From positions 62,001 to 126,000 of IMG/VR virus record IMGVR_UViG_3300030294_000005: a DNA stretch of 64,000 nt, one strand, 5' to 3'. How positions within the stretch are numbered: the first letter of the stretch is position 1; the number at the start of each line of letters is the position of its first letter. Positions 6,427 through 45,986 of this stretch are shown piece by piece. Position numbers and translations under genes: made by a program. Under the pieces are notes generated by a model. That model saw only the letters and a list, made by a program, of their open reading frames with translations. It did not search any database and was not told where the DNA came from.

Positions 6427-6441
6427 AACGTTAACCTCCTT

Positions 6442-7521: not shown

Positions 7522-7553
7522 ATTATATTTACACCTCCATAAATTTTAAATAA

Positions 7554-7589
7554 TAAATAGAGATTACCCTAAAAGGTAATCTCTATTTA
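7554..7589 (-). terminator. Intrinsic terminator
   Basis: TAAATAGAGATTACC-loop-GGTAATCTCTATTTA inverted repeat. Confidence 0.75.
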
Positions 7590-7599
7590 AAGCTTTTAA

Positions 7600-8619: not shown

Positions 8620-8640
8620 TACTATTGTACCTCCTCAAAT

Positions 8641-9714: not shown

Positions 9715-9761
9715 TTTTTATCATTCCTTTCTGAAAAAATTTTATTTAAATTAAACTTTTT

Positions 9762-9773
9762 TATTAATATGTT
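9762..9773 (-). promoter_or_regulatory. Putative late promoter AACA-N6-TA
   Basis: Minus strand AACA-TATTAA-TA ahead of the internal-head cluster. Confidence 0.65.
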
Positions 9774-9817
9774 TATAGTAGTATGGTATTATTACCATAA
9801 ATATTGATAATTATATA

Positions 9818-10846: not shown

Positions 10847-10853
10847 CTCCTAT

Positions 10854-13720: not shown

Positions 13721-15058
13721 ATGGGATTAAATAATCATTCAGTATTCTTATTAAATGATAGTACAGTGAAGGCAGTAGGATCTAATAGCAATGGACAATG
13801 TGGGGTTGGATCTATAACCCCTACTAATCAATTAGCTTTATATCTTATACCAAGTCTTAATAATGTAAAACAAATAGCATGTGGTACTAGTTATACTATA
13901 TTTTTATTGAGTGATGGTACAGTAAAAACTATAGGATCTAATGGTTTTGGACAATGTGGCACTGGTAATATTACTACACCACAATTAACTTTATACGCTA
14001 TACCTAGTTTAACTAATGTAAAACAAATAGCATGTGGAAGTGCATTTTCGGTATTTTTATTAAATGATGGTACAGTAAAAACAATAGGAGATAATAGCTT
14101 TGGACAATGCGGTAATAGTGCAACTACTGGTACTAATCAATTAACTTTATTTACTATACCTAGTTTAACTAATGTAAAATCAGTATCATGTGGTAGTAGT
14201 CATTTAGTATTTTTATTAAATGATGGTACAGTAAAAACAGTAGGAAGAAATTTTTTCGGGCAATGTGGTACTGGTACTACTACTACTCAAACAGTACCAT
14301 TTATTATGCCAGGATTGACTAATGTAAAACAAGTAGTAGCTGGTAATGGTCATTCTGTCTTCTTATTAAACGATGGAACAGTAAAAACTATAGGACAGAA
14401 TGATGGCGGACAATGTGGTACTGGTAATACCACTACACCACAATTATCTTTATATACTATACCAAGTTTAACTAATGTAAAATCAATATCATGTGGAGCT
14501 TATCATAATGTATTTTTATTAAATGATGGTACGATAAAAACAGTAGGTCAGAATGATAGTGGGCAATGTGGTACTGGTAATACTACTACCCCACAATTAA
14601 CTTTATATACTATACCAAGTCTTAGTAATGTAAAACAAATATCATGTGGACAAAGTAATTCAATTTTCTTATTAAATGATAACACAGTAAAAGCAATAGG
14701 ATATAATAATTATGGACAATGTGGTAATGGTAGTACTAATGCAGTGCAATTAACTTTATATACTATACCTAGTTTAATTATTAAATGTTTATGGGATAAT
14801 GTACTAATAATTATTATAAAATATTTAATAAAACAATATTCAGCATACTATTCTATTAAGTCAACTTATTATGATGGATCAAATTATAAACCATTAACTC
14901 TAACTGGTGGATCTGTACCTAATAAAGCTGATATAGAATTATATGGATTTGACAGTATTAATGATCTTAATACATCAATCACCATAGGAAGTGAAACCTT
15001 TAAACCAATAAATAAATTACTTAATATATTTAGTATAAAAGAATATATAAGTAAATAA
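13721..15058 (+). CDS. RCC1/BLIP-II repeat beta-propeller protein
   Basis: Seven repeats of about 52 aa: VKQIACG..HSVFLLNDGTVKT.G.N..GQCG.G. Confidence 0.9.
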   Translation: MGLNNHSVFLLNDSTVKAVGSNSNGQCGVGSITPTNQLALYLIPSLNNVKQIACGTSYTIFLLSDGTVKTIGSNGFGQCGTGNITTPQLTLYAIPSLTNVKQIACGSAFSVFLLNDGTVKTIGDNSFGQCGNSATTGTNQLTLFTIPSLTNVKSVSCGSSHLVFLLNDGTVKTVGRNFFGQCGTGTTTTQTVPFIMPGLTNVKQVVAGNGHSVFLLNDGTVKTIGQNDGGQCGTGNTTTPQLSLYTIPSLTNVKSISCGAYHNVFLLNDGTIKTVGQNDSGQCGTGNTTTPQLTLYTIPSLSNVKQISCGQSNSIFLLNDNTVKAIGYNNYGQCGNGSTNAVQLTLYTIPSLIIKCLWDNVLIIIIKYLIKQYSAYYSIKSTYYDGSNYKPLTLTGGSVPNKADIELYGFDSINDLNTSITIGSETFKPINKLLNIFSIKEYISK

Positions 15059-25300: not shown

Positions 25301-28300
25301 GAGTAATAATAACCCATTTATTGCTTTAATTGTTCCAGCTGTTAACTTCATACCAAGTGTTGGTTCTTGTACTATACCTATAATATTTGCAGCATCCATA
25401 AATCCTGATGTAAAATCTGCTATTGCCCAAATAGCATTTATTATACCTGCTGAACCTATTAACCCTGCAACTTTACCACCTATCTTTGCTGCTGATTCTG
25501 TAACATGTTTTTCTAACCATTCTGTTAATGGTTTTGCTAAATCTTTACCAACTACTTTTACACCACCACTAAGACCTTTAAATGTTTCATTAGCGACTAA
25601 TTGTTCCATAAATTGAGTTACTTTTTTACATAATTTATCTATAATCCCTTTTCCAGCATCTTTAGCAAGTGATGAGGCTACATCTTCAGCTCCTGTTTTT
25701 GCAGCATCTGTTGTTACTGTTTTTATTGCTCCTGTTACTGTATTTTTAACAATATCTTCAGCACCTGTCTTTGCTGCATCTGTTGCTGCTGCTCTAGCTT
25801 CTTTTTTAGCTGTCATTCCTGTAACATCTAAAATTTTATTTTCAACACTACTTCCAACTTTTGTGCTTAACTTATCTAATCCTGTTTTTTTATCTATATA
25901 ATCAAATGGCTTTCTTAATAGATCTCCTGCTTTATCTAATACCCCAACTCCAGTTTTCTTAACTACTTTAGTAGCTTTTCCTAATAATGTTTTTGGAGCT
26001 GATCTATCTACTAATTTAGCAACAGTTTTTATACCATTACCACCTTGTATAACATCTCTTGCAGCAGAAGTTGCTACATGAGTTTGTACTGATTCTTCAC
26101 CATTTTGACCAGATAATCCAACTGCTGTTCCTGCTGTTGTTACTAATGCTGGGAATAAATTAAGTAATGCAAATTTTATACCATCAGCTAGAACTGGCAT
26201 TAATTCATCTCTCATCCATGGTCCTACGGTTTTAGTTAAAAATGGTTGAATTGTACCATCCCATAAATCTTTTAAAACAGGTCCTACTACTTTAACTATT
26301 TGAGGAAGGAATGCTACTGCTGCACCTATACCAGCTACCATTTTAATCTTATCTAATATATCATCTAGAAATGAATTCTTTTTATCTTTATCTTTATTAA
26401 ATGGATTTAATTTATCAACAAAGCCTTTAAACATATCTCCAAACTTTGCAAATATACTTTTATTACTATTTTCATCTTTTGCTGCATCTTCTAAAGCAAG
26501 TTTAGTACTAGTATCTCCTCTATCTGCAACTAAATCTTTTCTACCATTTCTGGTAAATTTCATTACATTTCCATGTTCATCTATCTTCTCTACAAGATTC
26601 TTACTATCAGCATTATTTTTAACAAGAGTAGTAAGTCTATCAAGCATTTTCTGAAATATAGTTCTATTATCTGAATCATTTTTATTCATATTGACTAATA
26701 ATGATGGAACTACTTTCATAACAGATTCAACAGCATTTGGAGTATTAACATATTCACCCTTACTTAAAGCTGCTATTTTAGTTTTATCAACTATACCACC
26801 AGTTGCATAAGTTTCTACTTTATTTGGATCTAAACCTTCTGCTTCTGTAGTCTTTTCTTCGTCTTCTTTTCTAACTTCAGGATTGAAATAAGGTTTAAAT
26901 CTATCTTCAGATTTTAAATCATTCTCATTTAATTTATACTCATCTCTAATACCCTTTCTAAATTTATCTAAATATTCTTTAGGAGTTTGTAATGACTTAA
27001 TTTTTCTTATAGTACTTTCTGTTGGTTTAGATGATTTTAATTTTACTAAATCATTTAAAGCTTTTTCTTTTAATTCTTTTGGTAAATTTGAATCATTAAT
27101 TTGTTCAAATCTCTTATTAATCATATCACTTACTGTTTTATTAATTGCATCTTGCTTTTTATTCTCAGGAATTGATTTACTAAAGATTGTTTTTTTTGCA
27201 ATATCTGTAGAGTTTTTAGTATATTCTTCAGTATTCAATTCATTGACATCCATTCCAGCTATTTTCTTAAGTACATCTAAAGTATCTTTAAAATAATTAA
27301 TTATTTCTTTATGATTGGTTTGTTCCATTTCTAGAACTACTGTTTGTTCTGGTGTTACATTAGGATCTTGCTCTTTTGTCCCACCAACTTCTTTCTTAAC
27401 CAGATTCATATACTTTTCTATATCATGTTTATTAGTTAAATCTAAATTCTTAAGTCCTGGAATATTCTTTAATTTCTTTTGTAATTCTGCAGTAGTTTCT
27501 TTACTATTATTAATCATATTATTAGTCGATTTTAATTTATTAGAATTTTGATCAATAAGATTTAATAAATCAAAAGCTTTTGTATTATCTTGATTTTGTA
27601 AATCATTTATCATTTTAGTTACTTCATCAAACTTACCAGCTTTTATTAACTTTTCTGCTTTTGTGGCATCAGCATTATTACTAAATAATTTATATATATC
27701 TGGTTGTTTTTTTCTAAATAATTTAGCTCTATCTGATATAGACATTGTTTTATCGTTCCAAGAACTAGATAAGTCTTTTACTAGACCATGTCTATTTTTT
27801 GTATTATCAAGATTTTTACTATTTTGGATATCTATATATTTCTTTGCTTTATCAGTTTCACCACTCTTATCTATTTGTTTCATAGCACTCATGCTTTTAT
27901 CATATGATAAATATTTAGATATTTCTGAACCCATTGAATTAGTTAAATCAACTTTTTTCTTATGCAAATTTTTATCATTACTATTTAATAAATCTAATGT
28001 ACCAACTAATTCTTTTTTATCATCATCAGACATATCATTTAACATTTCATCAAAATCAGCAAACTTATCTTTCTTTAAGAAAGTATCTACTTTATTAGTT
28101 TTTCTATAATTAACTCTCTCTTCAGCAGACATATAGTCAGCGTTACCAGTTCGTATATGTGACTTTCTTCTACTTTTACCATAGGCTCCTAGCATTGCGA
28201 AAGGTGCACCTATAATTTTCTTTGGTAGAAAAGTTAATGTCTTGAACATGCCACTAAAGAAGCCCTTTAATGGTTTCAGTAATTTATCTTCTACTAATTT

Positions 28301-31300
28301 TGTCAATGGAACTCCAAATGCATTTTCAAAACTTTTATTTATATGACCTCCTATTTTATCAAACATTCCTTTGAATAATAATTTTATATCTTTCTTAATA
28401 GGATCAAATGCTTCTTTTAAAGGAGAAAATATCTTATTTTCTATAAAGTCTTGAATCTTAGTGGTAGTTACAGTCATAAATGATTTTAATGGATCTATAA
28501 GTACATGCCTTAATGAAGGTAATAATCCATTTTCATATTCTCCTGTCTTAGGATCTTTTGTACCAAATATAACTTTATTAAATTGATCAGTAGAACTGAG
28601 CATCCCACCTGCTGCTCCAATAGCTGCATTACCTAATAATCCAAATGGTCCAGTGAACACACCTATAGCTGCTCCTGCTGCCATTCTTGGTAAAAACTTT
28701 TTAATTTGTTCTTGATGTTTAGGTTTGATTAAACCTGTTTCACCAAATAAGAAATCCATTGCATGTTCATTATTTTTAGCAAATGCTATAGAAGAACCTA
28801 TTAATAATCCACCTACAGGTCCAAATGGAACAAATGGTAATAATCCTGTTAATCCACCAGCTATGCCAAATGATTGTAAATCTGGTGCTAACTTAGATAT
28901 TTGGTCTACAAATTTCTTTGGTATTACTCCACCATCTCGTTCTTTTGTTTCAGCATTAAAATCTCCAAATAACCAGTTCTGAATTTTCTCACTATTTTTA
29001 GTTAATGATATTCCAGCTCCTACAGCTGCACCTAATAAAGGTCCACCTATGGCCCCTGTTATTAATGAAACACCTCCACCTAGAAGTCCAGCTCCCATTG
29101 CTTCTGGTGCATATTTAGATATATTCTTTGTTACATCACTTATAGCTTCACCAAATTTCTTTTTCTCTCTATTTGGATTAACTCCAAATAAAGCATCTTT
29201 AACTTTGGTTGTTCCTTTATACAATTCATCTACAACCTGTTTTGCAAAAGGTTCTGATTCATTATACATTGCTCGTTGAATTGGATCTGTTGGTATTCCT
29301 TTTTTATCAAATTGACTTATCTTAGTAGTATACTCTTCTAATGCTTTATTCAAATTGATATTAAATACATTGAATACTTTATCATATAATTTATTGGCTT
29401 TTAATTCTTGTAACTTATTAAGTAGTTCGGGGTTTTCTACAGCAGTAGACATAAAGTTAGTAAATTCATCTTTACTACCGAGTTTAGAAGATTCTACAAA
29501 CCCTTGTACTTTTTTATCAGCTTGGATACCTATAGATCTAGATGATCTACCTAAAGCTGTACCTGATTCTATATCAGTTAATATACCTAATAAACTTTTA
29601 ACTTTATCAGATGTCAAAACTACTTCACCTTTACCTAATGTAGCAACCTGAGCATTTTCAATAACTCCACCTTGTTCATGATGAGGCATATTTTTATACA
29701 TCCAGTTTGATATTACACTAGTAAGACCTTGTGCAAATCCTAATGTTGCTTTTCCTTCTGGATTAGTAGTTAATGATGGATCTAATATATCTGCTTTTAT
29801 AGAACCTCTTTTAGTAGTTTCGCTAGTACTCATTGCTGATTTTAATAAACCAAATATACCAGATACGTTCTCTTTTATTGAAGATAAATAATCTGATACT
29901 TTTGTATTAAATCCTCCACCTTGTTGATCATCCATAGTGTTAAATGCAGATGCAGTTCCTTCAAAGTCTTTTGCTGATTTTTTAATTGCATCTTGAGGAG
30001 AATATTTATTAGCTATTATATCATTTACTGAAAGTTTTGATAATGAATCTTCATTAAATAATATATTATATTTACCTAACTTACTATATAGCTTAGAATA
30101 TGAACCATCTTTCTGTGACAAATCTTTTGTAAGATTCATCAATGTATTGAATTTTAAAGAGTCTAATTCCATTGGTTTATTAGCAAAACTATTAAATATA
30201 TTTTCCAATAATCCTTGTTCAGAATCGTCTAAGTTTGCTAAGTTCTTTAAGCCTTTACCATATTCATGCTTACTATATTCGAATACTCCTTCATTTACAT
30301 TTTGTTGCTTATCTACTAATTTCGATATAGTATCTGCAACTTTATTTTCTGTTTTTGGAATAGTTCCATCTTTAGCTTTAACATCTAATTCATCTAAAGA
30401 ATTTTCCATATTAACTTTAGTCTTTGATTTCTTTGATCTAAATTTATCAACTAATGGGCCATATACTGTCTTAAGTGAATTCTTTGATACTTGAAAAGCA
30501 TTAGCAAAAACATCTTTAGTTGCTTTCATTATTGCTGAGAATAATCCAGTATCTTTAGCAAATAAATAATCATGCATATTTTTCTTAATCTCATCTGGAT
30601 CAAGTCCAAACATACCAAATACTTTTTTGCTTAAGTCTCCCATACTCTTTATATCTAGTTTTTGCTTTATTGGATTTAGTATCTTTTCATTTATAAATAG
30701 ATTAAGTTGACCAAATTGACTAGCCAATTCTAATTTCATTATTCCAAATATACCATTAACATCTTGACCTTTATATTTAGTACTTCCAAATACTAAATCA
30801 TACATTCTTTGATCTACTTTGTTTATAGTATTCATTACAAATTTCATAGGCTTTGCTGTTATTTCGTTTAGTTTATCAATAACAGTTTTAGTTTTATCTG
30901 TTATACTGTCAGCTTCTAATAATTTATCTATTAAACCCTTCTTCTCACTTGCTTGATCTTTAAATCCTTTTTTAATATTTTCTAATTCTATCTTAGAATG
31001 AAGTTTCTTTGATAATTTAGTTTCATCATCTATATCAGAAACATTTATAACAGTTTTATCTTTTGATAATTGTCTTTCTTGGTCTCTTTTAAATCTTTCT
31101 TGATCTCTTTCAGCTTTTTGCCTTTTATCCGTTTCTGGTTTAATTCTTCTATTATCAGCTAAAGTTATACCATTAGAAGATGTTGGCATCGTATATTCAC
31201 TATCACCATATAATATTTTAGATTTGGAACTTGAAGATGAACCAAGACCATTTTGTCTTATAGCAGTTAATTCTTTGTACATATTTTGTAAGTAATAAAA

Positions 31301-33085
31301 AATATTATTACCTTTTTTATCTAGAGTTTTTAATAGACTAGAACTTCCTAAACCGCCTGAAGTAGTAGTAGTGCCATCTCCTTTTTTATCTAAAAATTCA
31401 CCAGAATTAAACCCATTAAATAAAGATTGTAAAATAGAGTCTGCACTATTTTCTTTAGACTTCATATCTTTAGTCTGTCTATCTCTTTGTTCTACTACAT
31501 TAGCACCTAATCCTAATTGTGTAGGTTTGTCCATATTTTTAAACATTGTTTTAAATATAGCCATTGATTTAGCATCTACACCATAGTCTATATGATCTGT
31601 AGTATTCTTGCTATTTACATCAAAGAATCCACCTTTATCATAAATACTTGATAATATTTTGTCCATATCTTCTCTTAATTTTTTCTGTTCATCTACAGTA
31701 TTAAAAGTTAAATATTTCATATATCCATCTATCTTGGTAAGAACATCACTAGATGCATCATTTTTATATCGCTTTTTACTATCCTCAAATGATTTCTTAA
31801 CAGATTCAGAGTCTACAAATTTTCCTTCATCATAATCATAAAGTCTTTCAGACTTACCTGATAATACTGCTAATATTTTACTTAGATATCCAGGAATAAC
31901 TTCTATAAGAGATTTTCTAGATTTGCCATCCCAATCAACTTTTCCCTTTTCATAGTTCTTAGTTTCTATTGTTGATTTTGCTGCATTTGATATTCCAAAG
32001 ATTTCACCTATCTTATTTAATATCATATTATCACTAGATTTCATTCCATTGATTTTAGCTATTATAGATCCAAAGAATCCTTTTAAACTATTATCAAAAT
32101 TTTTAATAGATTTGTCTAATGACTTTGGAATCATTTTATTTACTATATATGTCGGTACAAATTGTAATGGTGATGCCATAAACATCTCAAGCATATTACT
32201 ATCGTCACCCATCATACTATTCATAGATGTAAGTGATCCCATAGAATTACCAAAGTTCTTTTTTACATTTTTCATATACATCTTTATATCAGGAATACCT
32301 TTTCCCATTACATCTTCATATGAAATTCTATTTGATTCTTTCTGCTCTGTTTTCTTAGGAACTAAATTATCAGCTATTTGTCTTAGTAAAGATGTTTGTT
32401 CGAGCATTAGTTTATTAGACTCTTCAAAATACTTTTTAGAATTCTCTGCATGAGTCTGTAAAACTGTACTTGAGAAACTTAAAACTTTTGATATATTATC
32501 ATTTATAGCAGATAAGTTATTATTAAACAAATTATATGCGTGCATATTCTGGGTATATAGCATATTTGTTCCAGTTTTTTGAGAATCTGATGTATATTTT
32601 GCAGTTCTTGCTATTGTTGATGATATCATTTGTGCACTTTGTTCACTTGCAACTGAAATAACATCTGATATCATTAGATCTCCACTAGTTGTTGATCCTT
32701 TACCACTATCAAATGAACCAAATCCATCATCTTCTGAATCAAAATCTATATCATTAAATCCATCAGAATCTCCAAATCCCAAATTCTTATTTGTGATTTT
32801 ATCTATTCTGTCTTTATTCCAAAGTCTACCAGTTTGCAGATCTTCAAATACAGATGTTATACCAGTATCTGCTGCTTCATATATTTTAGAAGTCTTAAGT
32901 AAACTAAGACCCTTCTTATATGTGGTTTTATAGTTTATTATATTATGAGTTATATCTTTAAATAATTCAGAGTTAGTCTGTACTAAATCTGCAGTTGTAG
33001 GTGCTATTTTTGCGAATTTGTCTACTGTAGCATATGCTACAGACTTTCCTAAATTAGATATATAATTTGCTACTTTTATAGCCAT
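22337..33085 (-). CDS. Tape measure protein with Gly-rich TM region, C39-like peptidase and GH24 lysozyme domains
   Basis: 3582 aa, mostly helical. C39-like: YYSQGD..W...GTIGTSGCGPTSAAMV...GHFIV...NDP. Lysozyme: FIKDKEG...YKD..G..TIGYG...QNQFDSL.S..YNIG...GL..RR.EE. Late promoter at 33113-33124. Confidence 0.85.
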   Translation of the reverse strand: MAIKVANYISNLGKSVAYATVDKFAKIAPTTADLVQTNSELFKDITHNIINYKTTYKKGLSLLKTSKIYEAADTGITSVFEDLQTGRLWNKDRIDKITNKNLGFGDSDGFNDIDFDSEDDGFGSFDSGKGSTTSGDLMISDVISVASEQSAQMISSTIARTAKYTSDSQKTGTNMLYTQNMHAYNLFNNNLSAINDNISKVLSFSSTVLQTHAENSKKYFEESNKLMLEQTSLLRQIADNLVPKKTEQKESNRISYEDVMGKGIPDIKMYMKNVKKNFGNSMGSLTSMNSMMGDDSNMLEMFMASPLQFVPTYIVNKMIPKSLDKSIKNFDNSLKGFFGSIIAKINGMKSSDNMILNKIGEIFGISNAAKSTIETKNYEKGKVDWDGKSRKSLIEVIPGYLSKILAVLSGKSERLYDYDEGKFVDSESVKKSFEDSKKRYKNDASSDVLTKIDGYMKYLTFNTVDEQKKLREDMDKILSSIYDKGGFFDVNSKNTTDHIDYGVDAKSMAIFKTMFKNMDKPTQLGLGANVVEQRDRQTKDMKSKENSADSILQSLFNGFNSGEFLDKKGDGTTTTSGGLGSSSLLKTLDKKGNNIFYYLQNMYKELTAIRQNGLGSSSSSKSKILYGDSEYTMPTSSNGITLADNRRIKPETDKRQKAERDQERFKRDQERQLSKDKTVINVSDIDDETKLSKKLHSKIELENIKKGFKDQASEKKGLIDKLLEADSITDKTKTVIDKLNEITAKPMKFVMNTINKVDQRMYDLVFGSTKYKGQDVNGIFGIMKLELASQFGQLNLFINEKILNPIKQKLDIKSMGDLSKKVFGMFGLDPDEIKKNMHDYLFAKDTGLFSAIMKATKDVFANAFQVSKNSLKTVYGPLVDKFRSKKSKTKVNMENSLDELDVKAKDGTIPKTENKVADTISKLVDKQQNVNEGVFEYSKHEYGKGLKNLANLDDSEQGLLENIFNSFANKPMELDSLKFNTLMNLTKDLSQKDGSYSKLYSKLGKYNILFNEDSLSKLSVNDIIANKYSPQDAIKKSAKDFEGTASAFNTMDDQQGGGFNTKVSDYLSSIKENVSGIFGLLKSAMSTSETTKRGSIKADILDPSLTTNPEGKATLGFAQGLTSVISNWMYKNMPHHEQGGVIENAQVATLGKGEVVLTSDKVKSLLGILTDIESGTALGRSSRSIGIQADKKVQGFVESSKLGSKDEFTNFMSTAVENPELLNKLQELKANKLYDKVFNVFNINLNKALEEYTTKISQFDKKGIPTDPIQRAMYNESEPFAKQVVDELYKGTTKVKDALFGVNPNREKKKFGEAISDVTKNISKYAPEAMGAGLLGGGVSLITGAIGGPLLGAAVGAGISLTKNSEKIQNWLFGDFNAETKERDGGVIPKKFVDQISKLAPDLQSFGIAGGLTGLLPFVPFGPVGGLLIGSSIAFAKNNEHAMDFLFGETGLIKPKHQEQIKKFLPRMAAGAAIGVFTGPFGLLGNAAIGAAGGMLSSTDQFNKVIFGTKDPKTGEYENGLLPSLRHVLIDPLKSFMTVTTTKIQDFIENKIFSPLKEAFDPIKKDIKLLFKGMFDKIGGHINKSFENAFGVPLTKLVEDKLLKPLKGFFSGMFKTLTFLPKKIIGAPFAMLGAYGKSRRKSHIRTGNADYMSAEERVNYRKTNKVDTFLKKDKFADFDEMLNDMSDDDKKELVGTLDLLNSNDKNLHKKKVDLTNSMGSEISKYLSYDKSMSAMKQIDKSGETDKAKKYIDIQNSKNLDNTKNRHGLVKDLSSSWNDKTMSISDRAKLFRKKQPDIYKLFSNNADATKAEKLIKAGKFDEVTKMINDLQNQDNTKAFDLLNLIDQNSNKLKSTNNMINNSKETTAELQKKLKNIPGLKNLDLTNKHDIEKYMNLVKKEVGGTKEQDPNVTPEQTVVLEMEQTNHKEIINYFKDTLDVLKKIAGMDVNELNTEEYTKNSTDIAKKTIFSKSIPENKKQDAINKTVSDMINKRFEQINDSNLPKELKEKALNDLVKLKSSKPTESTIRKIKSLQTPKEYLDKFRKGIRDEYKLNENDLKSEDRFKPYFNPEVRKEDEEKTTEAEGLDPNKVETYATGGIVDKTKIAALSKGEYVNTPNAVESVMKVVPSLLVNMNKNDSDNRTIFQKMLDRLTTLVKNNADSKNLVEKIDEHGNVMKFTRNGRKDLVADRGDTSTKLALEDAAKDENSNKSIFAKFGDMFKGFVDKLNPFNKDKDKKNSFLDDILDKIKMVAGIGAAVAFLPQIVKVVGPVLKDLWDGTIQPFLTKTVGPWMRDELMPVLADGIKFALLNLFPALVTTAGTAVGLSGQNGEESVQTHVATSAARDVIQGGNGIKTVAKLVDRSAPKTLLGKATKVVKKTGVGVLDKAGDLLRKPFDYIDKKTGLDKLSTKVGSSVENKILDVTGMTAKKEARAAATDAAKTGAEDIVKNTVTGAIKTVTTDAAKTGAEDVASSLAKDAGKGIIDKLCKKVTQFMEQLVANETFKGLSGGVKVVGKDLAKPLTEWLEKHVTESAAKIGGKVAGLIGSAGIINAIWAIADFTSGFMDAANIIGIVQEPTLGMKLTAGTIKAINGLLLLGIIPESILVDLLLPVFALVFDKDQKIKGMRDASVKQVSDYNTKNGTSYDITQYNKTVLGKKNLEDYAGDTMGSSTAWAGLNDTKIRSDQGIKDGSNISLMNRVNEGAAGLMNGLSFGKINTKDTAKMLNKGNDIIAYKADQTTKWAGNKVNGAKKWLADDSILAAGNDTKIRSDLGLKDGVSLNTTDRVSMAAAGLLDTLSGGKINTKDSVKVINGAITDIEGKATKFWTTTSTNITKTFTDLKSDVVTGADNANKKLGSMLGMLDEKGNPMKLTDGLSVGWGIFTKDIGAAWDGMKKTALDTFNNISTTLKTTFDNISKAFSNGLAAVDTKLGSILGFKDANGNPISLTAGIDTLGKAMDNAINNIKTTVGNTVNNVGTSISNGWNSFTNGVSNFFNPVTTSLTASSNSSIAQRNAAVGGNGPAQSNNNKNKGGFGGSTNNGMVYYSQGDSDWSNTSYPYNGKGTIGTSGCGPTSAAMVISSLTKQKVTPVDTSAYAVNNGFRVEAGTSWDYFKNIGNKYGIGFDQTIDQKSILSALQNKQPVIFTGKGPAPFTTGGHFIVGAGSDGNNIEINDPVSLARSKSYPNTQIFKGMESAFIANKALDGTIPDVSSSASDTSSTDGTATTPSSLFDMLTGFQGIMTNGFNRIYGLDTTTDSSTGTTSTSVSTSADGLTSDNLVNFIKDKEGFRDKLYKDVTGTATIGYGSTHGAIMGKTSVTKDEATVQLKADLGDTATKLKADLDKKGVKLTQNQFDSLCSLGYNIGVNGLLSSNFYASIVGGQRSQSAITDGFNSFSHDGNNNVIPGLLPRRKEEASIFLSGTAPAYVSGGNGLDNTEMLKYRTTKMTEGGFGKAPSKIENTRSGGFGGSQTKINNKNKGGFGNILEYNNDVPTAKSTSSSDNTVTIGLIKSIINVLIKISSNTDNLQKIVEMLANVLNVKVPAQAIQNATTAAGTKQLSDMLSNSVDSSNTVDNSALLKILDQLAKE

Positions 33086-36536: not shown

Positions 36537-39500
36537 ATGATATTTTTAGACGAATTGGATAATCTAAAATTATATAAAAAACAATTGTTTTTACCAATAA
36601 ACGAAAAAAATAAAAGAAAAGGTTCTGCCGTTTTTTTATTAACTCCAAATTATGAATCATCTAAAAAATTAATGAATAATGATAGTTTAGTTACCAGATG
36701 GTTTGAAAGTTATTATATAGAGAAGGATATATCATATTTTATAAATCAAGAAGGATATATTGTTCTTAATGATAATATTCCATATAATGTATTAAATGAA
36801 GAATTAAGAAATAGAATTGTTGTTACTAATACAAATAATATTATAAATGAAGCAGCAACAGATACTAAATTGGTTAAAGTTAAAGATCATCCATTATATG
36901 ATTATCTAAACTTTGATGAATATGATCCAGATGATATAATAGAGATTCCAATTTCTGATATAAAAGGAACTAATTTAGCTGAAGCTGATATACCTAATAC
37001 TTTAAAAGATCCAAAGAGTCTTCAAAGAGCATTGAAAATAAGGATGAGAAAACCTATAAATAGATTAAAGAGAATAGATCCTACTGACCCATCTAATACT
37101 GCAGCCCAAGTAGAAAAGATACAAGCATTAATGAATGAAAGTGCTTTAACTACAGAAGAGAAGAAAAAATTAAAAGATTCAGATTATGGATTATTAAAAA
37201 AGAAAAAATATCCTATGCCAGATAAGGAGCATGTACTATCAGCTATAAGATTTTTTAATTATGTAGATTCTGAGGATGAAAAAGAATTAGCTGATAATAT
37301 AAATAAAAAAATAAAAGAATATAAGATTGAAGATCAAGTTAATGTAGGAAAGAATAATAGATTTTCTAAATATTGCAATGAAGAATCTATAAAAGAATAT
37401 TTTAATTCTGAATCAACTCCTATTATATATGATTTACATTGTGCATTTTTAAAGTTCTTAGATGGACATTCTACAGAAGATGAAATGCTTTCAGATGTAG
37501 ATGTGAGATTTAAAGATAATAGTGAATTAATGAATGATGGATTAATAAATGACATTGATATATTTAATGACATTTCTGATTGTATATCATTTTATCTACC
37601 AAGATTAATTGATAAATGCAAATGCGATATAACTAAAATATTGAATAAATATTTATTCAATGATGATCTACAAGAATCATATATGGTAGGACATGTAGTC
37701 AAAGACTATTCAATTGACAAAATGGGACTAATGACAAAAGATTCTTTAATTATGTTTAATGAGAATATGGATGAAACAATAATGAATGAAGCAAATAAAG
37801 ATTACAATCCTGTTCTTTATAAGTTATTATATAATGAAAGATATAGAACTCCTAAAGAAGTAATAGCAATATATGATAATGTAAAGATAGATGCTCCTTA
37901 TATAACTAAAACATATTTAGATTATACTAAATATAGTAAACTCAATCTATTTGTAGATCTATCTTTCTATAACCAAACCTTCTTTAAAAATAATATATAT
38001 AAATTAGATAAGGGTATAGATTTATATTTTGAGTTTATAACAAGATTCTTAAAAGATTCTAGATTGGGAGCTGCGGGATATAATAAGAAAACTGTATTCA
38101 TTCCTGTTGATGACTGGACTAAACCTGATATGAAAAAAGTATATAACTATACTGAAGATATAAATCCGTTATCAATGATTTGTAGACTTATGGGGACTAC
38201 CAAATTATTAAATATACAACAAGAGTGGAAAGATATTGTATTAGTATTATTCTCTGCTCAAGGATATTTTAAAATAGATATCAATAGTTTAGTTGATAAA
38301 GATATAAGTCAAATACAAGTATTATTAAATAAACTAAAAAATAAAGATGTATCAATAGCAACTGATAATATAGATTCTCCTAAGGCTATAGTAGCTACTA
38401 TTGTAGATAAGATTGAAATTAGTCAAAATATAGAAATTAATAATTTGACTGGTAAAGCAGCAAAAGGAACTATATCTAATGGTGAGTTAGATGATAAGTT
38501 AAGTAATTCTGTTACATCTAAAACTGTTATTGATATTAATAAAAATGCACCTTCTGAAGATGTAGCACAGAATGATGATTTAAAAAATGAATTAGTTACT
38601 AAATTAAAAGATGCTTCTAAAGATGCTGCTTCAACTAATAATGTATTAGATGACATAAATAATGATGATGATATTAAAAAAATAATAGATACATTGTCAA
38701 CACAAGAAGATAATTCAGTAAAAATTAATGCAGCAAGATCAGCTAGAGTAACTAAATTGAACAATGATTTTTTAGACAGTAAGTTAAAAGAAACTACAGT
38801 AAAACAAATGATTGAACATGCTACCAATAATGAGCCTATCCCAAAAACTGAATTAAAAATAGATAGTGTGAATGAAGAGTGGAAAGACTTACGTTATATG
38901 AATTTTGAAAAAATATATAATCCAGCTGATGATATAGTAACTATGATAAATAGTTTTTCAGATAAAACAGCTCCAGTTATGGTACGAAATTTAAATATAG
39001 AAGACTCTTCTACTACAGAAGATTATAAAGATACCTGGACTGCTGAAATGGAAGATGTAAATGGAACTAGGTTTACATTAAAATTCGATATACCTAAATT
39101 TAAAGAAAATAAATTTATGTTATTAGGTGGTAATGAAAAAACAATAAATGGACAACTTGTATTATTACCTATAATAAAAACTGATGAAGATACTGTTCAG
39201 ATAGTTTCAAATTATAATAAAATATTTATAAGAAGATTTGGAACATCTAAAGGAAAATCTAATATAGTTGCTAATAGATTAATAAAAGCATTATCTAAAG
39301 AAAATCCCTTTAAAGTAGTTCCTGGAGATAATACAAAGATATGTTCTAAATATGAATTACCAATAGACTATATAGATTTAGCCTCACAATATTCTAAAAT
39401 AGAAACTAAGAAGCATATATTTTATTTTAATCAAGATGAAATAAGGGAGAAATATAAAGATACTATAGATCTTAAAAAAGGAATTCCAATATGTGTTGAA

Positions 39501-41780
39501 AAAGTTTCTAATAATATTATATATTTTAATGGTGATAATAATCAACAATTAGCAAATCTAATAAGATCTCAATTAATAATAGATGATTCATCATTTGAAG
39601 AAATATTTGAAAATACATCAATTGCTTCAAGATATACCTACTCAAAGGCTAGTATACTGAACACTGAGATTCCTCTAATACTCGTTATGGCATATAGTGA
39701 AGGTTTGCCTAAAGTGTTAAAGAAAGCCCATATAAATTACGAAATAATAGAAAAGAGACCAGCTTATGATAAGAATACCCAAGATATTATAAAATTTAAA
39801 GATGCATATATTTTATATACTTTAGATTATAATTCATCTTTATTGATGAATGGATTTAAAGAATGTGGAACTGAATTATATTCAATTTCAGAGATAACTA
39901 ATAAAACTATGTATTTAGATTTTCTTGATTTATTTGGCGGTAGATTAAGAGCAGATGGTCTTGATAACTTTCATGATTTAATGATAGATGTACCTATCAC
40001 AAAAGAAATATTAGAGTATTATAAACTACCAACTGATTATATAGAAGTTTTAGCTTATGCTAATTCACTGCTAGGAGATAATAAATATATAAGACATACT
40101 GATCAACGTGGTAGAAGGTATAGATCTAATGAAATAGTTGCTGGATATGCTTATCAAGCATTGGCTGATTCATATGGAGAATATAAAAGAAAGTTGAATC
40201 AATCAAGAAAAGCTACAATGGTTATAAAACAAAATGAAGTAATAAATAGAATCTTATTAGATCCAACAGCTTCTGATTTATCTACATTAAATCCAATACT
40301 AGAGCAAGAAGCTATGAATACTGTTAGTACAAAAGGACTAGTAGGAATGAACTCTGATAGAGGTTATAGTTTAGATAAAAGAACATTTGATAAATCAATG
40401 ATAAATGTATTAGGATTATCTACAGGGTTTGCTGGTAATGTTGGTATCTCAAGACAAGCAACAATAGATATGAATATAGAAGGTAAACGTGGATATATAA
40501 AAGTAACTGATGATCCAGCTGATTTAAATGTAACTAAATCTTTAACTATAACTGAAGCATTAACTCCATTCGGTACTAATATGGATGATCCATTTAGATC
40601 TGCAATGACATTTATACAAACATCTAAACATGGAATGAGAATAGCAAAAGGAATGCCTTCATTAATAACTAATGGAGCAGATGAAGCTTTGCCATTTATG
40701 GTTACTGATAAATTTGCATTTAAAGCTAAAGAAGATGGAAAAGTTATAGAGAGGTCAGATGATTATATGATAGTGCAATATAAATCTGGTGCTAAAGATT
40801 TTGTTGATTTAAGAAATAATATTAAAAAGAATTCTGATGGAGGTTTCTATATAACTTTAAAGCTAGACTCTGATTATAAAAAAGATAAAACATTTAAAAA
40901 AGATAATATACTTGCATATGATAAATTATCATTTTCAGATATGGTAGGTCATACAGATGATATTGGTTATAATTTAGGAGTATTGGTAAAAATAGCAATA
41001 TTAAATACTGATGAAGGTTATGAAGATAGTGCAATAATTTCAGAATATTTATCTGAAGCAATGGCATCTGAAGTTGTTGTAATGAAAGATATATCATTAC
41101 CAAAAAATACTAATATTTATAATATTGTAAAGAAAGGCGAACCAATTCAAGAAGGAGATCCATTAATAATATTTCAGAACTCTTTTGATGAAGAAGATGC
41201 CAATTTACTATTAAAGAATCTAGCTGGAGATGAAGAAGATATATCTGATCTTGGAAGAATTAGAGTTAAGTCTAAAATAACTGGAAATGTAGAGAATGTC
41301 AAAATCTATAGAACAGTTGAAAAAGAAGAGTTATCTGATTCTCTTAAGAAAACAGTAAATCAAATAGAAAAACCAACAAAGCAATTAAAAGATGTAATGA
41401 AAAAATATGATATAGATGAGTATAATAAACTGGACCCAGATTATAAACTTGATTCAACTGGAAAACTTAAAAATACAGATGATGGAATCCTGATAGAGTT
41501 CTATTTAAAATATAAAGATAAAATGTCTGTAGGAGATAAGTTAATATATTATTCAGCATTAAAAGGTGTTATAAAAGATATATTCCCACTTGGTAAAGAA
41601 CCATCATCTGAGTTTAGAAAAGATGAAAAAATTCATACACTCCTTGCATGTTCCTCAGTTAATGGTAGAATGGTGGGAAGTATATTATTATCTGCCCCTA
41701 TAAATAAAATAGTAATAGAATTAGATAGAGCAGTTAAAACTGAATTAGAAATACCATTTAAATATTTAGATGAGGAATAA
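36537..41780 (+). CDS. Phage multisubunit RNA polymerase beta-like subunit (probably virion RNAP) with long N-terminal extension
   Basis: DDPFRSAM..IQ..H (cf. RpoB DDANRALM..NMQRQ), GYEDSAIISE (GYNFEDS), GDKLIYYSALKGVI (GDKMAGRHGNKGV), SVNGRM (PSRM); late promoter and xxE/[SA] sites in the leader. Confidence 0.85.
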   Translation: MIFLDELDNLKLYKKQLFLPINEKNKRKGSAVFLLTPNYESSKKLMNNDSLVTRWFESYYIEKDISYFINQEGYIVLNDNIPYNVLNEELRNRIVVTNTNNIINEAATDTKLVKVKDHPLYDYLNFDEYDPDDIIEIPISDIKGTNLAEADIPNTLKDPKSLQRALKIRMRKPINRLKRIDPTDPSNTAAQVEKIQALMNESALTTEEKKKLKDSDYGLLKKKKYPMPDKEHVLSAIRFFNYVDSEDEKELADNINKKIKEYKIEDQVNVGKNNRFSKYCNEESIKEYFNSESTPIIYDLHCAFLKFLDGHSTEDEMLSDVDVRFKDNSELMNDGLINDIDIFNDISDCISFYLPRLIDKCKCDITKILNKYLFNDDLQESYMVGHVVKDYSIDKMGLMTKDSLIMFNENMDETIMNEANKDYNPVLYKLLYNERYRTPKEVIAIYDNVKIDAPYITKTYLDYTKYSKLNLFVDLSFYNQTFFKNNIYKLDKGIDLYFEFITRFLKDSRLGAAGYNKKTVFIPVDDWTKPDMKKVYNYTEDINPLSMICRLMGTTKLLNIQQEWKDIVLVLFSAQGYFKIDINSLVDKDISQIQVLLNKLKNKDVSIATDNIDSPKAIVATIVDKIEISQNIEINNLTGKAAKGTISNGELDDKLSNSVTSKTVIDINKNAPSEDVAQNDDLKNELVTKLKDASKDAASTNNVLDDINNDDDIKKIIDTLSTQEDNSVKINAARSARVTKLNNDFLDSKLKETTVKQMIEHATNNEPIPKTELKIDSVNEEWKDLRYMNFEKIYNPADDIVTMINSFSDKTAPVMVRNLNIEDSSTTEDYKDTWTAEMEDVNGTRFTLKFDIPKFKENKFMLLGGNEKTINGQLVLLPIIKTDEDTVQIVSNYNKIFIRRFGTSKGKSNIVANRLIKALSKENPFKVVPGDNTKICSKYELPIDYIDLASQYSKIETKKHIFYFNQDEIREKYKDTIDLKKGIPICVEKVSNNIIYFNGDNNQQLANLIRSQLIIDDSSFEEIFENTSIASRYTYSKASILNTEIPLILVMAYSEGLPKVLKKAHINYEIIEKRPAYDKNTQDIIKFKDAYILYTLDYNSSLLMNGFKECGTELYSISEITNKTMYLDFLDLFGGRLRADGLDNFHDLMIDVPITKEILEYYKLPTDYIEVLAYANSLLGDNKYIRHTDQRGRRYRSNEIVAGYAYQALADSYGEYKRKLNQSRKATMVIKQNEVINRILLDPTASDLSTLNPILEQEAMNTVSTKGLVGMNSDRGYSLDKRTFDKSMINVLGLSTGFAGNVGISRQATIDMNIEGKRGYIKVTDDPADLNVTKSLTITEALTPFGTNMDDPFRSAMTFIQTSKHGMRIAKGMPSLITNGADEALPFMVTDKFAFKAKEDGKVIERSDDYMIVQYKSGAKDFVDLRNNIKKNSDGGFYITLKLDSDYKKDKTFKKDNILAYDKLSFSDMVGHTDDIGYNLGVLVKIAILNTDEGYEDSAIISEYLSEAMASEVVVMKDISLPKNTNIYNIVKKGEPIQEGDPLIIFQNSFDEEDANLLLKNLAGDEEDISDLGRIRVKSKITGNVENVKIYRTVEKEELSDSLKKTVNQIEKPTKQLKDVMKKYDIDEYNKLDPDYKLDSTGKLKNTDDGILIEFYLKYKDKMSVGDKLIYYSALKGVIKDIFPLGKEPSSEFRKDEKIHTLLACSSVNGRMVGSILLSAPINKIVIELDRAVKTELEIPFKYLDEE

Positions 41781-44759: not shown

Positions 44760-45986
44760 TTACTTATCTTTATTTTCTATTACTTCATCTACAGGTTCTC
44801 CTATAACTTCATCTATATTATATTCTTCTTTCTCATAAGTACGTTTATATTCAGGAGTTAATGTGTCATACATAGACTTACCTAAAACTAAATTTATAAT
44901 AGGTTCTACTGTTTCTTGTATTTCCATAGCTAATATTCTTATTTCAGCTTGAGCATGAATATCTGTTCTCAATGCTAGGAATGCTATTAATGATTTAAAT
45001 GTAAATGTCATATATAATGACGTTTGGGCATTGTTTGGTAAGTATGCTCTAGCATCTTCTGGTATTAATCTATTTTCACCTAATGATTTATCATTTAATT
45101 GATTATAGATTTTCATAAGTTCATCGCCTAATTCTTGTAATGTTAACTCACTTGTTGAACCATTAAATCCTATATTATATTTATAATTTACATCATATTT
45201 ATCTTTATATTTATCAGGGGAATTGAATCCAAACTTTTCCGCACAATAATCTACATATCTTTGTGATAGTTGGGTTATTCCATTTCTATGTCTATCTACT
45301 TGTTGAGATATAATTCTTGATATATCTTTAAATAATATAGTGATAGAGCAGAAGTCTAATAAATCTTCTAATGAAAATATCTTATTAGTTTCATTATAGA
45401 TATACATGATATCATCCATGTTTACAATAGAGACGTTGGCACTTAATACTTTATTATTAAAAACAGCTGGATAAGTACAATCTAAATCTATAAATTTAGA
45501 TTCTGACATTATTTCATCTTCTATAAAATCATTTAAATATTCCTTATTAATATTATAGAGATTATTTAATATGATTTTTGCAATAGAATTATCTTGATTA
45601 TCTATATTTCTAAAGATATGTTTATATCCTCTTATAGAACCTCCAATAAGAAAATGTATTTCTTTTCCTATATATTTTATTTTTATATTTAAATATTTAC
45701 ATAGAGTTTCTATTTCTGCTAACTCTATTAGATTTTCTATGTCTAATTGTAATATAAGATATATTACTATATTAGAATGCTCTAGAATTGATTCATGCCC
45801 AGTTGCTACTCTTCTTTTTATATAATCTAATTTAGCTTGTATTCCTACCTCTCCATCTTTGTCATAGCATATTTTACATGCATCATGTATGATATCAATA
45901 TGATTATTAGAATATATGAATTTATCATATACTCCTTTGGTAAATAGTTTATGTTTTTTAATTAGTGATGATAATAATTTCTTCAT
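44760..45986 (-). CDS. thyX: FAD-dependent thymidylate synthase (extended, tandem-type)
   Basis: GHESILEH, ISR.ISQQ.DRHR....QLSQRYV, EDARAYLPN and LR...HAQAEIR.LA; late-type promoter at 46016-46027. Confidence 0.9.
   Translation of the reverse strand: MKKLLSSLIKKHKLFTKGVYDKFIYSNNHIDIIHDACKICYDKDGEVGIQAKLDYIKRRVATGHESILEHSNIVIYLILQLDIENLIELAEIETLCKYLNIKIKYIGKEIHFLIGGSIRGYKHIFRNIDNQDNSIAKIILNNLYNINKEYLNDFIEDEIMSESKFIDLDCTYPAVFNNKVLSANVSIVNMDDIMYIYNETNKIFSLEDLLDFCSITILFKDISRIISQQVDRHRNGITQLSQRYVDYCAEKFGFNSPDKYKDKYDVNYKYNIGFNGSTSELTLQELGDELMKIYNQLNDKSLGENRLIPEDARAYLPNNAQTSLYMTFTFKSLIAFLALRTDIHAQAEIRILAMEIQETVEPIINLVLGKSMYDTLTPEYKRTYEKEEYNIDEVIGEPVDEVIENKDK

What the first reader, a model, noticed from the sequence alone, without database searches (positions are those of the whole stretch)
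36537..41780. RNAP beta-like subunit with a large N-terminal extension bearing head-protease sites and a truncated C-terminus
Seen: recognisable RpoB similarity covers roughly the C-terminal half, from a fork/Rif-pocket-like region to the GDK..KG motif. It stops about 35 aa after the RM motif and lacks the usual C-terminal GGQRFGEME clamp/switch part. The first 420 or so aa contain IINEA, LMNES, LQES and IMNEA sites, plus an inserted small domain (LKDSDYGL..KKKYPMPDKEHVLSAIRFFNYV, DUF6582-like) bracketed by such sites. Inference: a virion RNAP made as a polyprotein whose leader targets it to the prohead and releases passenger domains on maturation.
Basis: partly seen in the sequence, partly recalled or inferred. 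Interest (0 to 1): 0.6.

Follow-up and report, generated by a model that had tools for sequence, protein, structure and literature searches.

The report
Virion RNA polymerase subunit with cargo cassettes
This gene encodes the large beta-like subunit of the RNA polymerase that a giant phage packs into its head, and its first 418 residues look like a string of swappable passenger domains separated by head-protease cutting sites, a likely way of delivering extra proteins into the host.

Summary
The ORF (window 36537-41780, +, 1747 aa) is real and occurs letter for letter in three independent metagenome assemblies. [quoted passage not shown]

The "truncated C-terminus" is ordinary. It is the canonical vRNAP beta split, and the missing piece is a separate 243-aa gene at genome C1:176683-177414, outside the window.

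The N-terminal 418 aa are the interesting part. In 119 relatives a conserved ~75-aa leader and a conserved core flank a region of 0 to more than 1200 aa. That region carries different domains: DUF6582, GNAT, NUDIX, M23 peptidase, transglutaminase-like, P-loop.

Hydrophobic-hydrophobic-x-Glu motifs are enriched there (8.1 per 1000 aa against 1.1 in the core). They sit between domains and at the core junction. Indels between near-identical proteins start right after such a site and end just before or after one. The same motif lies near the N-terminus of the major capsid protein, and the genome encodes a T4 gp21-type prohead protease.

Cleavage and release of passengers are inferred, not shown. 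A processed vRNAP beta propeptide is already known from phage 201phi2-1. I found no description of the cassette array.

The parts
36537..41780 (+). Whole ORF, 1747 aa: precursor of the virion RNA polymerase N-beta subunit
   Evidence: the identical protein is in three assemblies
36537..36851 (+). Leader, aa 1-105. The conserved folded part is aa 1-~70 and the rest is a low-confidence linker.
   Evidence: Present at the N-terminus of 119 of 120 relatives. pLDDT about 80-88 for aa 1-60 and below 50 for aa 71-107. The leader profile also matches the AR9 N-beta N-terminus: 13.6 bits against a maximum of 9.3 in 500 shuffles.
36840..36854 (+). Candidate protease site 1, IINE|A (aa 102-106)
   Evidence: Kept in P0004 and P0012 and lost in the closest relative P0002. 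Lies in a low-pLDDT stretch.
36852..37139 (+). Segment aa 106-201: unknown, partly basic, no family match
37128..37142 (+). Candidate protease site 2, LMNE|S (aa 198-202)
   Evidence: E201 is conserved in at least 90% of alignment A1. The P0001/P0003 indel begins exactly after this E. A hydrophobic-x-E lies just upstream of the DUF6582 module in most relatives.
37140..37400 (+). DUF6582-like passenger module (aa 202-288)
   Evidence: PF20223. pLDDT above 90 for aa 221-280. Folded alone: pLDDT 80, pTM 0.70. Present in 56 of 120 relatives.
37401..37676 (+). Helical insert cassette (aa 289-380), absent from the closest relative P0002
   Evidence: no family match
37668..37679 (+). Candidate protease site 3, LQE|S (aa 378-381)
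   Evidence: P0002 has IKE|S at the same place. Both indels against P0002 and P0003 end just before it. Lies in the low-pLDDT stretch 374-387.
37677..37790 (+). Short conserved pre-core beta segment (aa 381-418), which includes MFNE|N at aa 406-410
37779..37793 (+). Candidate maturation site 4, IMNE|A (aa 415-419), at the junction with the conserved core
   Evidence: All 107 non-redundant junctions have hydrophobic-x-E, 79 of them at a fixed distance of 10-11 aa from the LLYxER anchor. Residue preferences: P4 I/V/F, P3 L/I/F, P2 N/T, P1 E, P1' A/D/S/N/G.
37791..41780 (+). Predicted mature N-beta core (aa 419-1747, 151 kDa)
40584..40607 (+). Fork/Rif-pocket-like motif DDPFRSAM (aa 1350-1357)
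   Evidence: aligned to DDxNRALMG of bacterial beta
41532..41567 (+). Catalytic double-psi beta-barrel motif GDK-x7-KG (aa 1666-1677)
   Evidence: aligned to GDKLAGRHGNKG of bacterial beta
41664..41681 (+). GRMVGS (the 'RM' motif, aa 1710-1715). The protein ends 35 aa later, at the canonical vRNAP beta split point.
   Evidence: The PHROG profile is matched to position 1416 of 1424.

Best explanation
The ORF encodes the precursor of the N-beta subunit of the five-polypeptide virion RNA polymerase of an uncultured AR9/PBS1-related jumbo phage.

The C-terminal end is the normal split of the vRNAP beta homologue. The rest of beta (the GEME-equivalent part) is a separate 243-aa C-beta protein encoded 73 kb downstream.

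The first 418 residues consist of three kinds of element:
- an ancestral ~70-aa leader domain;
- a lineage-variable array of passenger cassettes, here an unknown 96-aa segment, a DUF6582 module and a helical insert;
- hydrophobic-hydrophobic-x-Glu motifs that end each cassette.

Inferred mechanism: the precursor enters the prohead together with the other vRNAP subunits. The phage's T4 gp21-type prohead protease then cuts after E105, E201, E380 and E418. This would yield a 151-kDa mature N-beta and small passenger proteins, which stay in the head and are ejected into the host with the polymerase. In relatives the passengers are GNAT, NUDIX, M23 and other enzymes.

Shown: identity, the split, the modular architecture, and the position and enrichment of the motif. 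Inferred: cleavage, packaging, and ejection of the passengers.
For: Identity
- PHROG RNAP-beta profiles, E 1e-140.
- The best annotated hit is the AR9 'virion RNAP subunit, beta N-terminus'.
- GDK-x7-KG and the fork motif align to bacterial beta.
- Separate non-virion beta-N and beta-C genes, and virion beta' genes, are present in the genome.

Split
- The family profile is matched to its end.
- C-beta at C1:176683-177414 matches phrog_3233 over its full length (E 5e-29) and carries the ..DREMES.. equivalent of GEME.
- The five-polypeptide vRNAP is documented (PMC7598289; PMC5694885).

Architecture
- 119 of 120 relatives share the leader and 56 of 120 have the DUF6582 module. Total lengths run from 1406 to 2928 aa with a conserved core.
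- Cargo domains in relatives are GNAT, NUDIX, M23, transglutaminase-like and P-loop.

Sites
- General motif: 8.10 per 1000 aa in N-terminal regions (2.91 expected from composition) against 1.08 in cores (2.40 expected).
- Strict motif: 0.87 against 0.01 per 1000 aa.
- The motif is conserved at a fixed distance from the core in 79 of 107 junctions.
- Sites fall between Pfam domains.
- Indels between cores that are 92-99% identical start just after a site and end just before or just after one.
- All four sites of this ORF lie in or next to low-confidence linkers.

Protease and independent substrates
- Peptidase_S77 scores above its cut-off at C1:3233-3700.
- The major capsid protein has I-L-[NTQS]-E-[SN] at aa 35-39, with E38 invariant in 108 of 108 relatives.
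- The same motif lies near the N-termini of the protease and of head-protein paralogues.

Precedent
- 201phi2-1 vRNAP beta loses a 275-aa propeptide (PMC5694885).
- The AR9 vRNAP C-beta carries an HD domain and is annotated as proteolysed, with only the RNAP domain found in virions.
Against: - No protein-level data exist for this phage or for any member of its clade.
- Homologues differ. SPN3US N-beta keeps its long N-terminus and phiKZ gp178 probably does too, so an extension can stay attached.
- Site 1 is lost in the closest relative.
- Within this single sequence the looser motif is only mildly enriched (P 0.02). The strict motif was defined from the sites themselves.
- The relatives are not independent, so the pooled densities overstate the number of events.
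- The protease's specificity is inferred from motif sharing, not measured.
- The leader is joined directly to the core in AR9, so it may be part of the working enzyme rather than a disposable targeting peptide.
Confidence: 0.6

Rival explanations
1. The N-terminal region is never cleaved. It stays attached to N-beta, as in SPN3US, and the cassettes act in cis on the polymerase, for example in regulation, DNA or host-factor binding, or helping ejection. On this reading the hydrophobic-x-Glu motifs are just a feature of the inter-domain linkers.
For: SPN3US gp241 (159 kDa) is found unprocessed in virions and phiKZ gp178 probably is too (PMC5694885). The leader is contiguous with the core in AR9.
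Against: - The motif matches the conserved site near the capsid protein N-terminus.
- It is depleted in the cores and enriched 2.8-fold over composition in the extensions.
- Each cassette indel carries its own site.
- Enzymes such as an M23 peptidoglycan hydrolase, GNAT or NUDIX have targets away from a DNA-bound polymerase.
Confidence: 0.27
2. The protein is cleaved only at the core junction. The whole extension is a disposable scaffold or targeting propeptide that is degraded and leaves the head, so no functional passengers are delivered.
For: T4 propeptides are degraded and lost (established T4 biology, summarised in PMC5694885). The 275-aa propeptide of 201phi2-1 is not known to have a function. 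In this ORF the only recognisable passenger is an 85-aa domain of unknown function.
Against: Relatives carry well-conserved enzyme domains with strong Pfam scores (GNAT 7e-23, NUDIX 1e-25, M23 1e-20), which would be pointless if destroyed. Internal sites lie between the folded domains and not inside them.
Confidence: 0.1
3. The long ORF is an artefact, produced by fusion of neighbouring genes through an assembly or sequencing error or a missed intron.
For: AR9 RNAP genes are broken by introns (six exons in the AR9 homologue).
Against: - The identical 1747-aa product is present in three independent assemblies.
- More than 100 relatives have the same uninterrupted leader-cargo-core order.
- There are no stops, and no homing-endonuclease ORF lies inside the gene.
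Confidence: 0.02

Closest known systems
AR9/PBS1 virion RNAP N-beta subunit (BI022_gp188)
   Same: Best annotated homologue, about 30% identity. Same C-terminal end point, and a similar ~66-aa N-terminal leader.
   Different: In AR9 the leader runs straight into the core, with no cargo cassettes and no junction motif. The AR9 gene is broken by introns and this one is not.
201phi2-1 vRNAP beta (gp274/273), with a propeptide cut at TFE-275
   Same: A vRNAP beta-N subunit with a long N-terminal region that is removed by a T4-like prohead protease (PMC5694885).
   Different: A single cut is described, with no recognised enzyme cargo. The related protease of SPN3US cuts at A-x-E sites, whereas the motif inferred here is hydrophobic-hydrophobic-x-E.
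SPN3US gp241 / phiKZ gp178 (vRNAP N-beta)
   Same: Same subunit of a five-polypeptide vRNAP with a separate ~25-kDa C-beta. The long N-terminal region is unique to phage enzymes.
   Different: Reported as not processed. Similarity to this protein starts only at about aa 750-800.
AR9 vRNAP C-beta fused to an HD phosphohydrolase (BI022_gp077)
   Same: An enzyme domain fused N-terminally to a vRNAP subunit. It is annotated as proteolysed, with only the RNAP part found in virions (PMC7598289).
   Different: Different subunit, and a single fixed domain. In this phage the C-beta has no HD domain.
T4 capsid-targeting-sequence proteins (Alt, IPI-III) cut by gp21
   Same: Head-packaged, ejected effector proteins made with an N-terminal targeting peptide that a Peptidase_S77 protease removes at a hydrophobic-x-Glu site (summarised in PMC5694885; the T4 motif is from my own knowledge).
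   Different: In T4 these are separate small proteins with 10-20-aa peptides. Here several cassettes are strung on a polymerase subunit.
Polyvalent proteins of phages, including N4-like vRNAP fusions (Iyer et al. 2017, PMC5512222)
   Same: Many effector domains (GNAT, peptidases and others) lie in one polypeptide that is delivered with the DNA and is proposed to be cut into units.
   Different: Those proteins carry their own zincin-like processing peptidase and a single-subunit RNAP. None was found here, and cutting would be done by the prohead protease.

Membership tests
Jumbo-phage virion RNAP, N-beta subunit | Sequence match to the family profile over the core | tested here: met
   phrog_3148 E 1.2e-140 and phrog_14872 E 1.7e-131. 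tblastn finds N-beta genes in 309 phage records.
Jumbo-phage virion RNAP, N-beta subunit | Catalytic beta double-psi beta-barrel motif with two lysines (GDK-x7-KG) | tested here: met
   aa 1666-1677, aligned to bacterial beta
Jumbo-phage virion RNAP, N-beta subunit | Beta is split after the barrel and a separate small C-beta gene exists | tested here: met
   C1:176683-177414, 243 aa, phrog_3233 over its full length
Jumbo-phage virion RNAP, N-beta subunit | A paralogous non-virion RNAP set lies elsewhere in the genome, so this copy is the virion one | tested here: met
   Non-virion beta-C, beta-N, beta'-N and beta'-C homologues of AR9 were found. This ORF pairs with the AR9 virion copy.
Jumbo-phage virion RNAP, N-beta subunit | All five vRNAP polypeptides are present | tested here: inconclusive
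   N-beta, C-beta and two beta' pieces were found. I did not look for the small C-beta' (the SPN3US gp244 type).
Jumbo-phage virion RNAP, N-beta subunit | The protein is present in virions | not testable with these tools
   Uncultured phage, no proteome
Substrates of a T4 gp21-type prohead protease | The protease gene is present | tested here: met
   PF03420 at 45.7 bits, above its 27-bit cut-off. phrog_3014 'head maturation protease'.
Substrates of a T4 gp21-type prohead protease | The same cleavage-type motif occurs in bona fide head substrates | tested here: met
   ILNE|S at aa 35-39 of the major capsid protein, with E38 in 108 of 108 relatives. Whether it is cut is inferred.
Substrates of a T4 gp21-type prohead protease | Cleavage is observed | not testable with these tools
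   Needs mass spectrometry or an in vitro assay
DUF6582 (PF20223) | Profile match at the curated threshold | tested here: inconclusive
   This sequence scores 25.1 bits against a cut-off of 27.3. All 40 homologous modules match, best E 5e-12, and several exceed the cut-off.
Polyvalent proteins (Iyer et al. 2017) | Several effector domains lie in one delivered polypeptide | tested here: inconclusive
   This protein has one recognisable small domain. Relatives have up to four (GNAT x2, NUDIX, DUF6582).
Polyvalent proteins (Iyer et al. 2017) | Own zincin-like (MPTase) processing peptidase | tested here: not met
   No such Pfam hit in this ORF or in the ten relatives' N-terminal regions that were scanned

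The most novel reading that the evidence does not exclude
In this clade of uncultured jumbo phages the vRNAP N-beta gene serves as a polyprotein delivery platform. A hypervariable array of effector cassettes sits between a conserved leader and the polymerase core, and each cassette brings its own prohead-protease site. The cassettes carry GNAT, NUDIX, M23, transglutaminase-like, P-loop and DUF6582 domains and many unknown ones. Maturation would release a phage-specific set of early effectors that are co-packaged and co-ejected with the first enzyme to act on the injected DNA.
Probability: 0.4. Interest if true: 0.75.

Novelty: new variant of a known kind. Interest (0 to 1): 0.6.

Why it matters
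The split beta subunit and the idea of a processed vRNAP propeptide are already known, so those parts are ordinary.

The cassette array is the part I could not find described in the papers searched. If it is real, it matters in three ways:
- It points to a natural catalogue of proteins that jumbo phages inject at the very start of infection. These are candidates for host takeover and anti-defence functions.
- It explains why N-beta lengths vary by 1500 aa among close relatives.
- It suggests a modular rule, leader plus cassette plus hydrophobic-x-Glu site, that could be tested for packaging chosen proteins into large phage heads, much as the T4 targeting sequence has been used.

It also gives a sequence-only way to infer the specificity of a prohead protease in uncultured phages.

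Tried and rejected
- Near-identity DNA search of the phage collection: no match, so the phage is uncultured or unrepresented.
- phmmer of the whole protein against the PDB: nothing. Only a profile of the core reached bacterial beta, at a modest E of 3e-4.
- Foldseek of the aa 1-430 model against the PDB and BFVD: no meaningful match. It is a multi-domain model with pTM 0.32.
- DUF6582 module folded alone: a confident small alpha/beta model, but the best PDB Z is 3.9, which is noise. The ESM Atlas returns only phage hypothetical proteins. Its function stays unknown.
- Leader and DUF6582 profiles against all ORFs of the genome: no second copy, so the leader is not a shared targeting tag of other head proteins.
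- Pfam on aa 100-205 and aa 285-420 of this ORF and on several relatives' cassettes: mostly nothing.
- PF25984, which the protein database lists for some relatives, could not be located with the local Pfam copy.
- Weak Pfam hits SHS2_Rpb7-N and TPR_23: dismissed as noise.
- The pairwise BLAST of the leader against AR9 was not significant (E 0.45). Only the profile test gave support.
- The Thomas et al. 2010 paper (PMC2871425) is not held, so its result is quoted second-hand from PMC5694885.
- Not used because they could not bear on the claim: read mapping, the complex predictor and the large representative search.
Full report
**What is there**

The window is AT-rich (about 25% G+C). It is part of a single 236,184-bp virus contig estimated to be 95% complete. 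The ORF at 36537-41780 (+) is 1747 aa. The same protein, letter for letter, is encoded in three independent assemblies, so it is not an assembly artefact. No near-identical DNA exists in the phage collection.

**Identity**

Two PHROG families annotated 'RNA polymerase beta subunit' match aa 644-1733 (E 1e-140) and aa 560-1734 (E 2e-131). tblastn finds homologues in 309 jumbo-phage records. The longest alignments are to Bacillus phages AR9 and PBS1, followed by Listeria, Staphylococcus, Yersinia and Fusobacterium jumbo phages at about 30% identity.

The AR9 gene is annotated 'beta subunit, N-terminus; virion RNAP subunit'.

Mapping all ORFs of the genome onto AR9 gives a full complement of RNAP genes:
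- this ORF pairs with the virion beta-N;
- virion beta' pieces lie at C1:32559-34106 and C1:133408-134625;
- non-virion beta-C is at C1:184671-186854 and non-virion beta-N at C1:191078-192826;
- non-virion beta'-N is at C1:139748-141265 and non-virion beta'-C at C1:234093-236159.

A profile of the core aligns to bacterial beta chains in the PDB at the fork/Rif-pocket region (aa 1350) and at GDK-x7-KG (aa 1666-1677). The E-value of 3e-4 is modest, but both hallmark motifs are in register.

**The 'truncated' C-terminus is normal**

The protein ends 35 aa after the RM motif, and the PHROG profile is matched to within 8 positions of its end. Jumbo-phage vRNAPs are known to consist of five polypeptides, with beta split into a large N-beta and a ~25-kDa C-beta (PMC7598289; SPN3US gp241 and gp218 in PMC5694885).

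The missing piece is at C1:176683-177414 (+), outside the window. It is 243 aa, matches phrog_3233 'RNA polymerase beta subunit' over its whole length (E 5e-29), matches the RNAP part of the AR9 HD-hydrolase/C-beta fusion, and carries the ..DREMES.. equivalent of GEME.

**The N-terminal 418 residues**

A word-based search seeded from the first 500 residues returned 283 metagenomic relatives, of which the 120 best are listed. BLAST against those 120 shows a strictly modular pattern:
- aa 1-~75 is conserved in nearly all of them;
- aa ~199-288 is present in about half;
- aa ~380/415-1747 is conserved in all, at 43-76% identity;
- the part between leader and core varies, so total length runs from 1406 to 2928 aa.

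Profile counts give the leader in 119 of 120 sequences. The DUF6582-like module is in 56 of 120, and in 48 of those it follows the leader directly.

Pfam scans of the variable parts of relatives find one to three GNAT acetyltransferase domains, NUDIX, Peptidase_M23, transglutaminase-like and P-loop domains in different combinations. Many segments have no match.

In this ORF the cargo is an unassigned 96-aa segment (106-201), the DUF6582 module (202-288) and a helical insert (289-380). The closest relative, P0002, lacks the helical insert.

All 40 homologous modules hit PF20223, best E 5e-12. This copy scores 25.1 bits against a cut-off of 27.3. Its fold is a confident small alpha/beta unit with no solved relative (best Z 3.9). 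Its look-alikes in the ESM Atlas are phage hypothetical proteins, either standalone ~80-aa proteins or larger ones that contain the module.

**The sites**

The four motifs are at aa 102-106, 198-202, 378-381 and 415-419.

1. Junction conservation. All 107 non-redundant junctions have hydrophobic-x-Glu, and 79 have it 10-11 residues before the conserved LLYxER anchor. Preferences are P4 I/V/F, P3 L/I/F, P2 N/T, P1 E, and P1' A/D/S/N/G.
2. Density. Across relatives the motif [IVFLMY][LIFMV]xE[ADSNGT] occurs 8.10 times per 1000 aa in the extensions, where composition predicts 2.91. In the cores it occurs 1.08 times per 1000 aa, where composition predicts 2.40. The strict form occurs 0.87 against 0.01 per 1000 aa.
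3. Position. Sites fall between Pfam domains and not inside them. The DUF6582 module is flanked on both sides in most relatives.
4. Indel boundaries. Indels between proteins whose cores are 92-99% identical begin just after a site and end just before or just after one. P0103 carries a 224-aa insert flanked by AVNE|G and PVNE|A that P0096 lacks. This ORF differs from P0003 by an insert (aa 202-377) that starts exactly after LMNE, and from P0002 by one (aa 288-377) that starts after SIKE. Both inserts end just before LQE|S. Cassettes therefore travel together with their own site.
5. Model confidence. In the AlphaFold model of aa 1-430 all four sites lie in or at the edge of low-confidence linkers: 71-107, just before the DUF6582 fold, 374-387 and 418-420.
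6. Protease and other substrates. The genome encodes a T4 gp21-type prohead protease (PF03420 above its cut-off, phrog_3014). The same motif is found at aa 35-39 of the major capsid protein, with E38 invariant in 108 of 108 relatives. It is also at aa 10-14 of the protease itself and at aa 46 and aa 62 of two head-protein paralogues in the window.

Caveats: the strict motif was defined from the ORF itself. The loose motif in this one sequence is only mildly enriched (P 0.02). The relatives share ancestry, so the pooled counts overstate independent events. Site 1 is missing in P0002.

**The leader**

The leader is not a novelty of the cargo-bearing forms. A profile of it matches the first ~66 residues of AR9 N-beta at 13.6 bits, against a maximum of 9.3 in 500 shuffles. 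In AR9 these residues run straight into the core. The pairwise BLAST was not significant.

The cargo is therefore best described as an insertion between an ancestral N-terminal domain and the rest of the subunit. No other ORF of the genome carries the leader. Its proposed role in prohead targeting remains a guess. In SPN3US the whole vRNAP assembles before it enters the prohead.

**Mechanism proposed**

The precursor is about 200 kDa. The steps, all inferred from sequence, are:
1. It joins the other vRNAP subunits and is built into the prohead.
2. The prohead protease cuts after E105, E201, E380 and E418, and perhaps after E409.
3. This gives fragments of 12.5, 10.9, 21.1 and 4.4 kDa and a mature N-beta of 151 kDa.
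4. The folded passengers stay in the head and are ejected with the polymerase.

My estimates:
- identity as virion N-beta and the canonical split: about 0.95;
- at least the junction site is cut: about 0.6;
- passengers are delivered as working proteins: about 0.4.

**Comparison with what is known**

- 201phi2-1 vRNAP beta loses a 275-aa propeptide, while SPN3US and probably phiKZ keep theirs.
- AR9 fuses an HD domain to C-beta, and its record says only the RNAP part is in virions.
- T4 targets Alt and the internal proteins with short peptides that gp21 removes.
- Polyvalent proteins, including N4-like vRNAP fusions, string effector domains together but carry their own processing peptidase. 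None was found here.
- Iyer et al. 2021 note only 'a unique N-terminal region' on this subunit.
- Searches for DUF6582, and for vRNAP together with acetyltransferase or Nudix, found no description of the cassette array.

I therefore rate this a new variant of a known kind.

**Verdict**

[quoted passage not shown] The polyprotein reading is well supported by comparative sequence evidence but is unproven at the protein level.

Noticed in passing
window 22337-33085 (-): A giant 3582-aa ORF whose aa 299-431 resemble the AR9 tail tape measure protein. A relative's contig has a 3129-aa neighbour with a Phage_lysozyme2 domain in a comparable position.
   Followed up: no
window 5152-12251 (-): Six tandem ORFs of 339-465 aa. 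Some resemble AR9 virion structural proteins. Several have hydrophobic-hydrophobic-x-E[SA] motifs at aa 33-69 (VLNE|S at aa 46, IINE|S at aa 62). They are candidates for processed internal head proteins.
   Followed up: partly
genome C1:53510-57097 (+), outside the window (locus L012:13510-17097): A 1195-aa protein with an N-terminal GNAT domain, a crotonase/ClpP-like domain at aa 806-948 and an IINE|S motif at aa 1003. It may be a second multi-domain protein cut by the head protease.
   Followed up: no
genome C1:2960-3781 (-), locus L010: The prohead protease itself carries IINE|T at aa 10-14, plus VVSE|S (aa 179) and LLYE|S (aa 229) near the end of the protease domain. This fits the C-terminal self-cleavage reported for SPN3US gp245.
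   Followed up: partly
window 13721-15058 (+): A 445-aa protein with strong matches to RCC1-repeat ('regulator of chromosome condensation') phage families and weak tail-protein matches.
   Followed up: no
window 44760-45986 (-): A 408-aa protein whose C-terminal half matches thymidylate synthase families. The N-terminal ~200 aa are unassigned.
   Followed up: no
genome C1:176683-177414 (+), locus L014:6683-7414: The vRNAP C-beta of this phage lacks the HD phosphohydrolase domain that AR9 and PBS1 fuse to the same subunit. Passenger domains therefore sit on different vRNAP subunits in different lineages.
   Followed up: partly
relatives P0103 aa 175-398 and P0052 aa 460-587: Two unassigned cassettes begin with a ..YHGS.. 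motif straight after the site. They have no Pfam match and their fold and activity were not examined.
   Followed up: no
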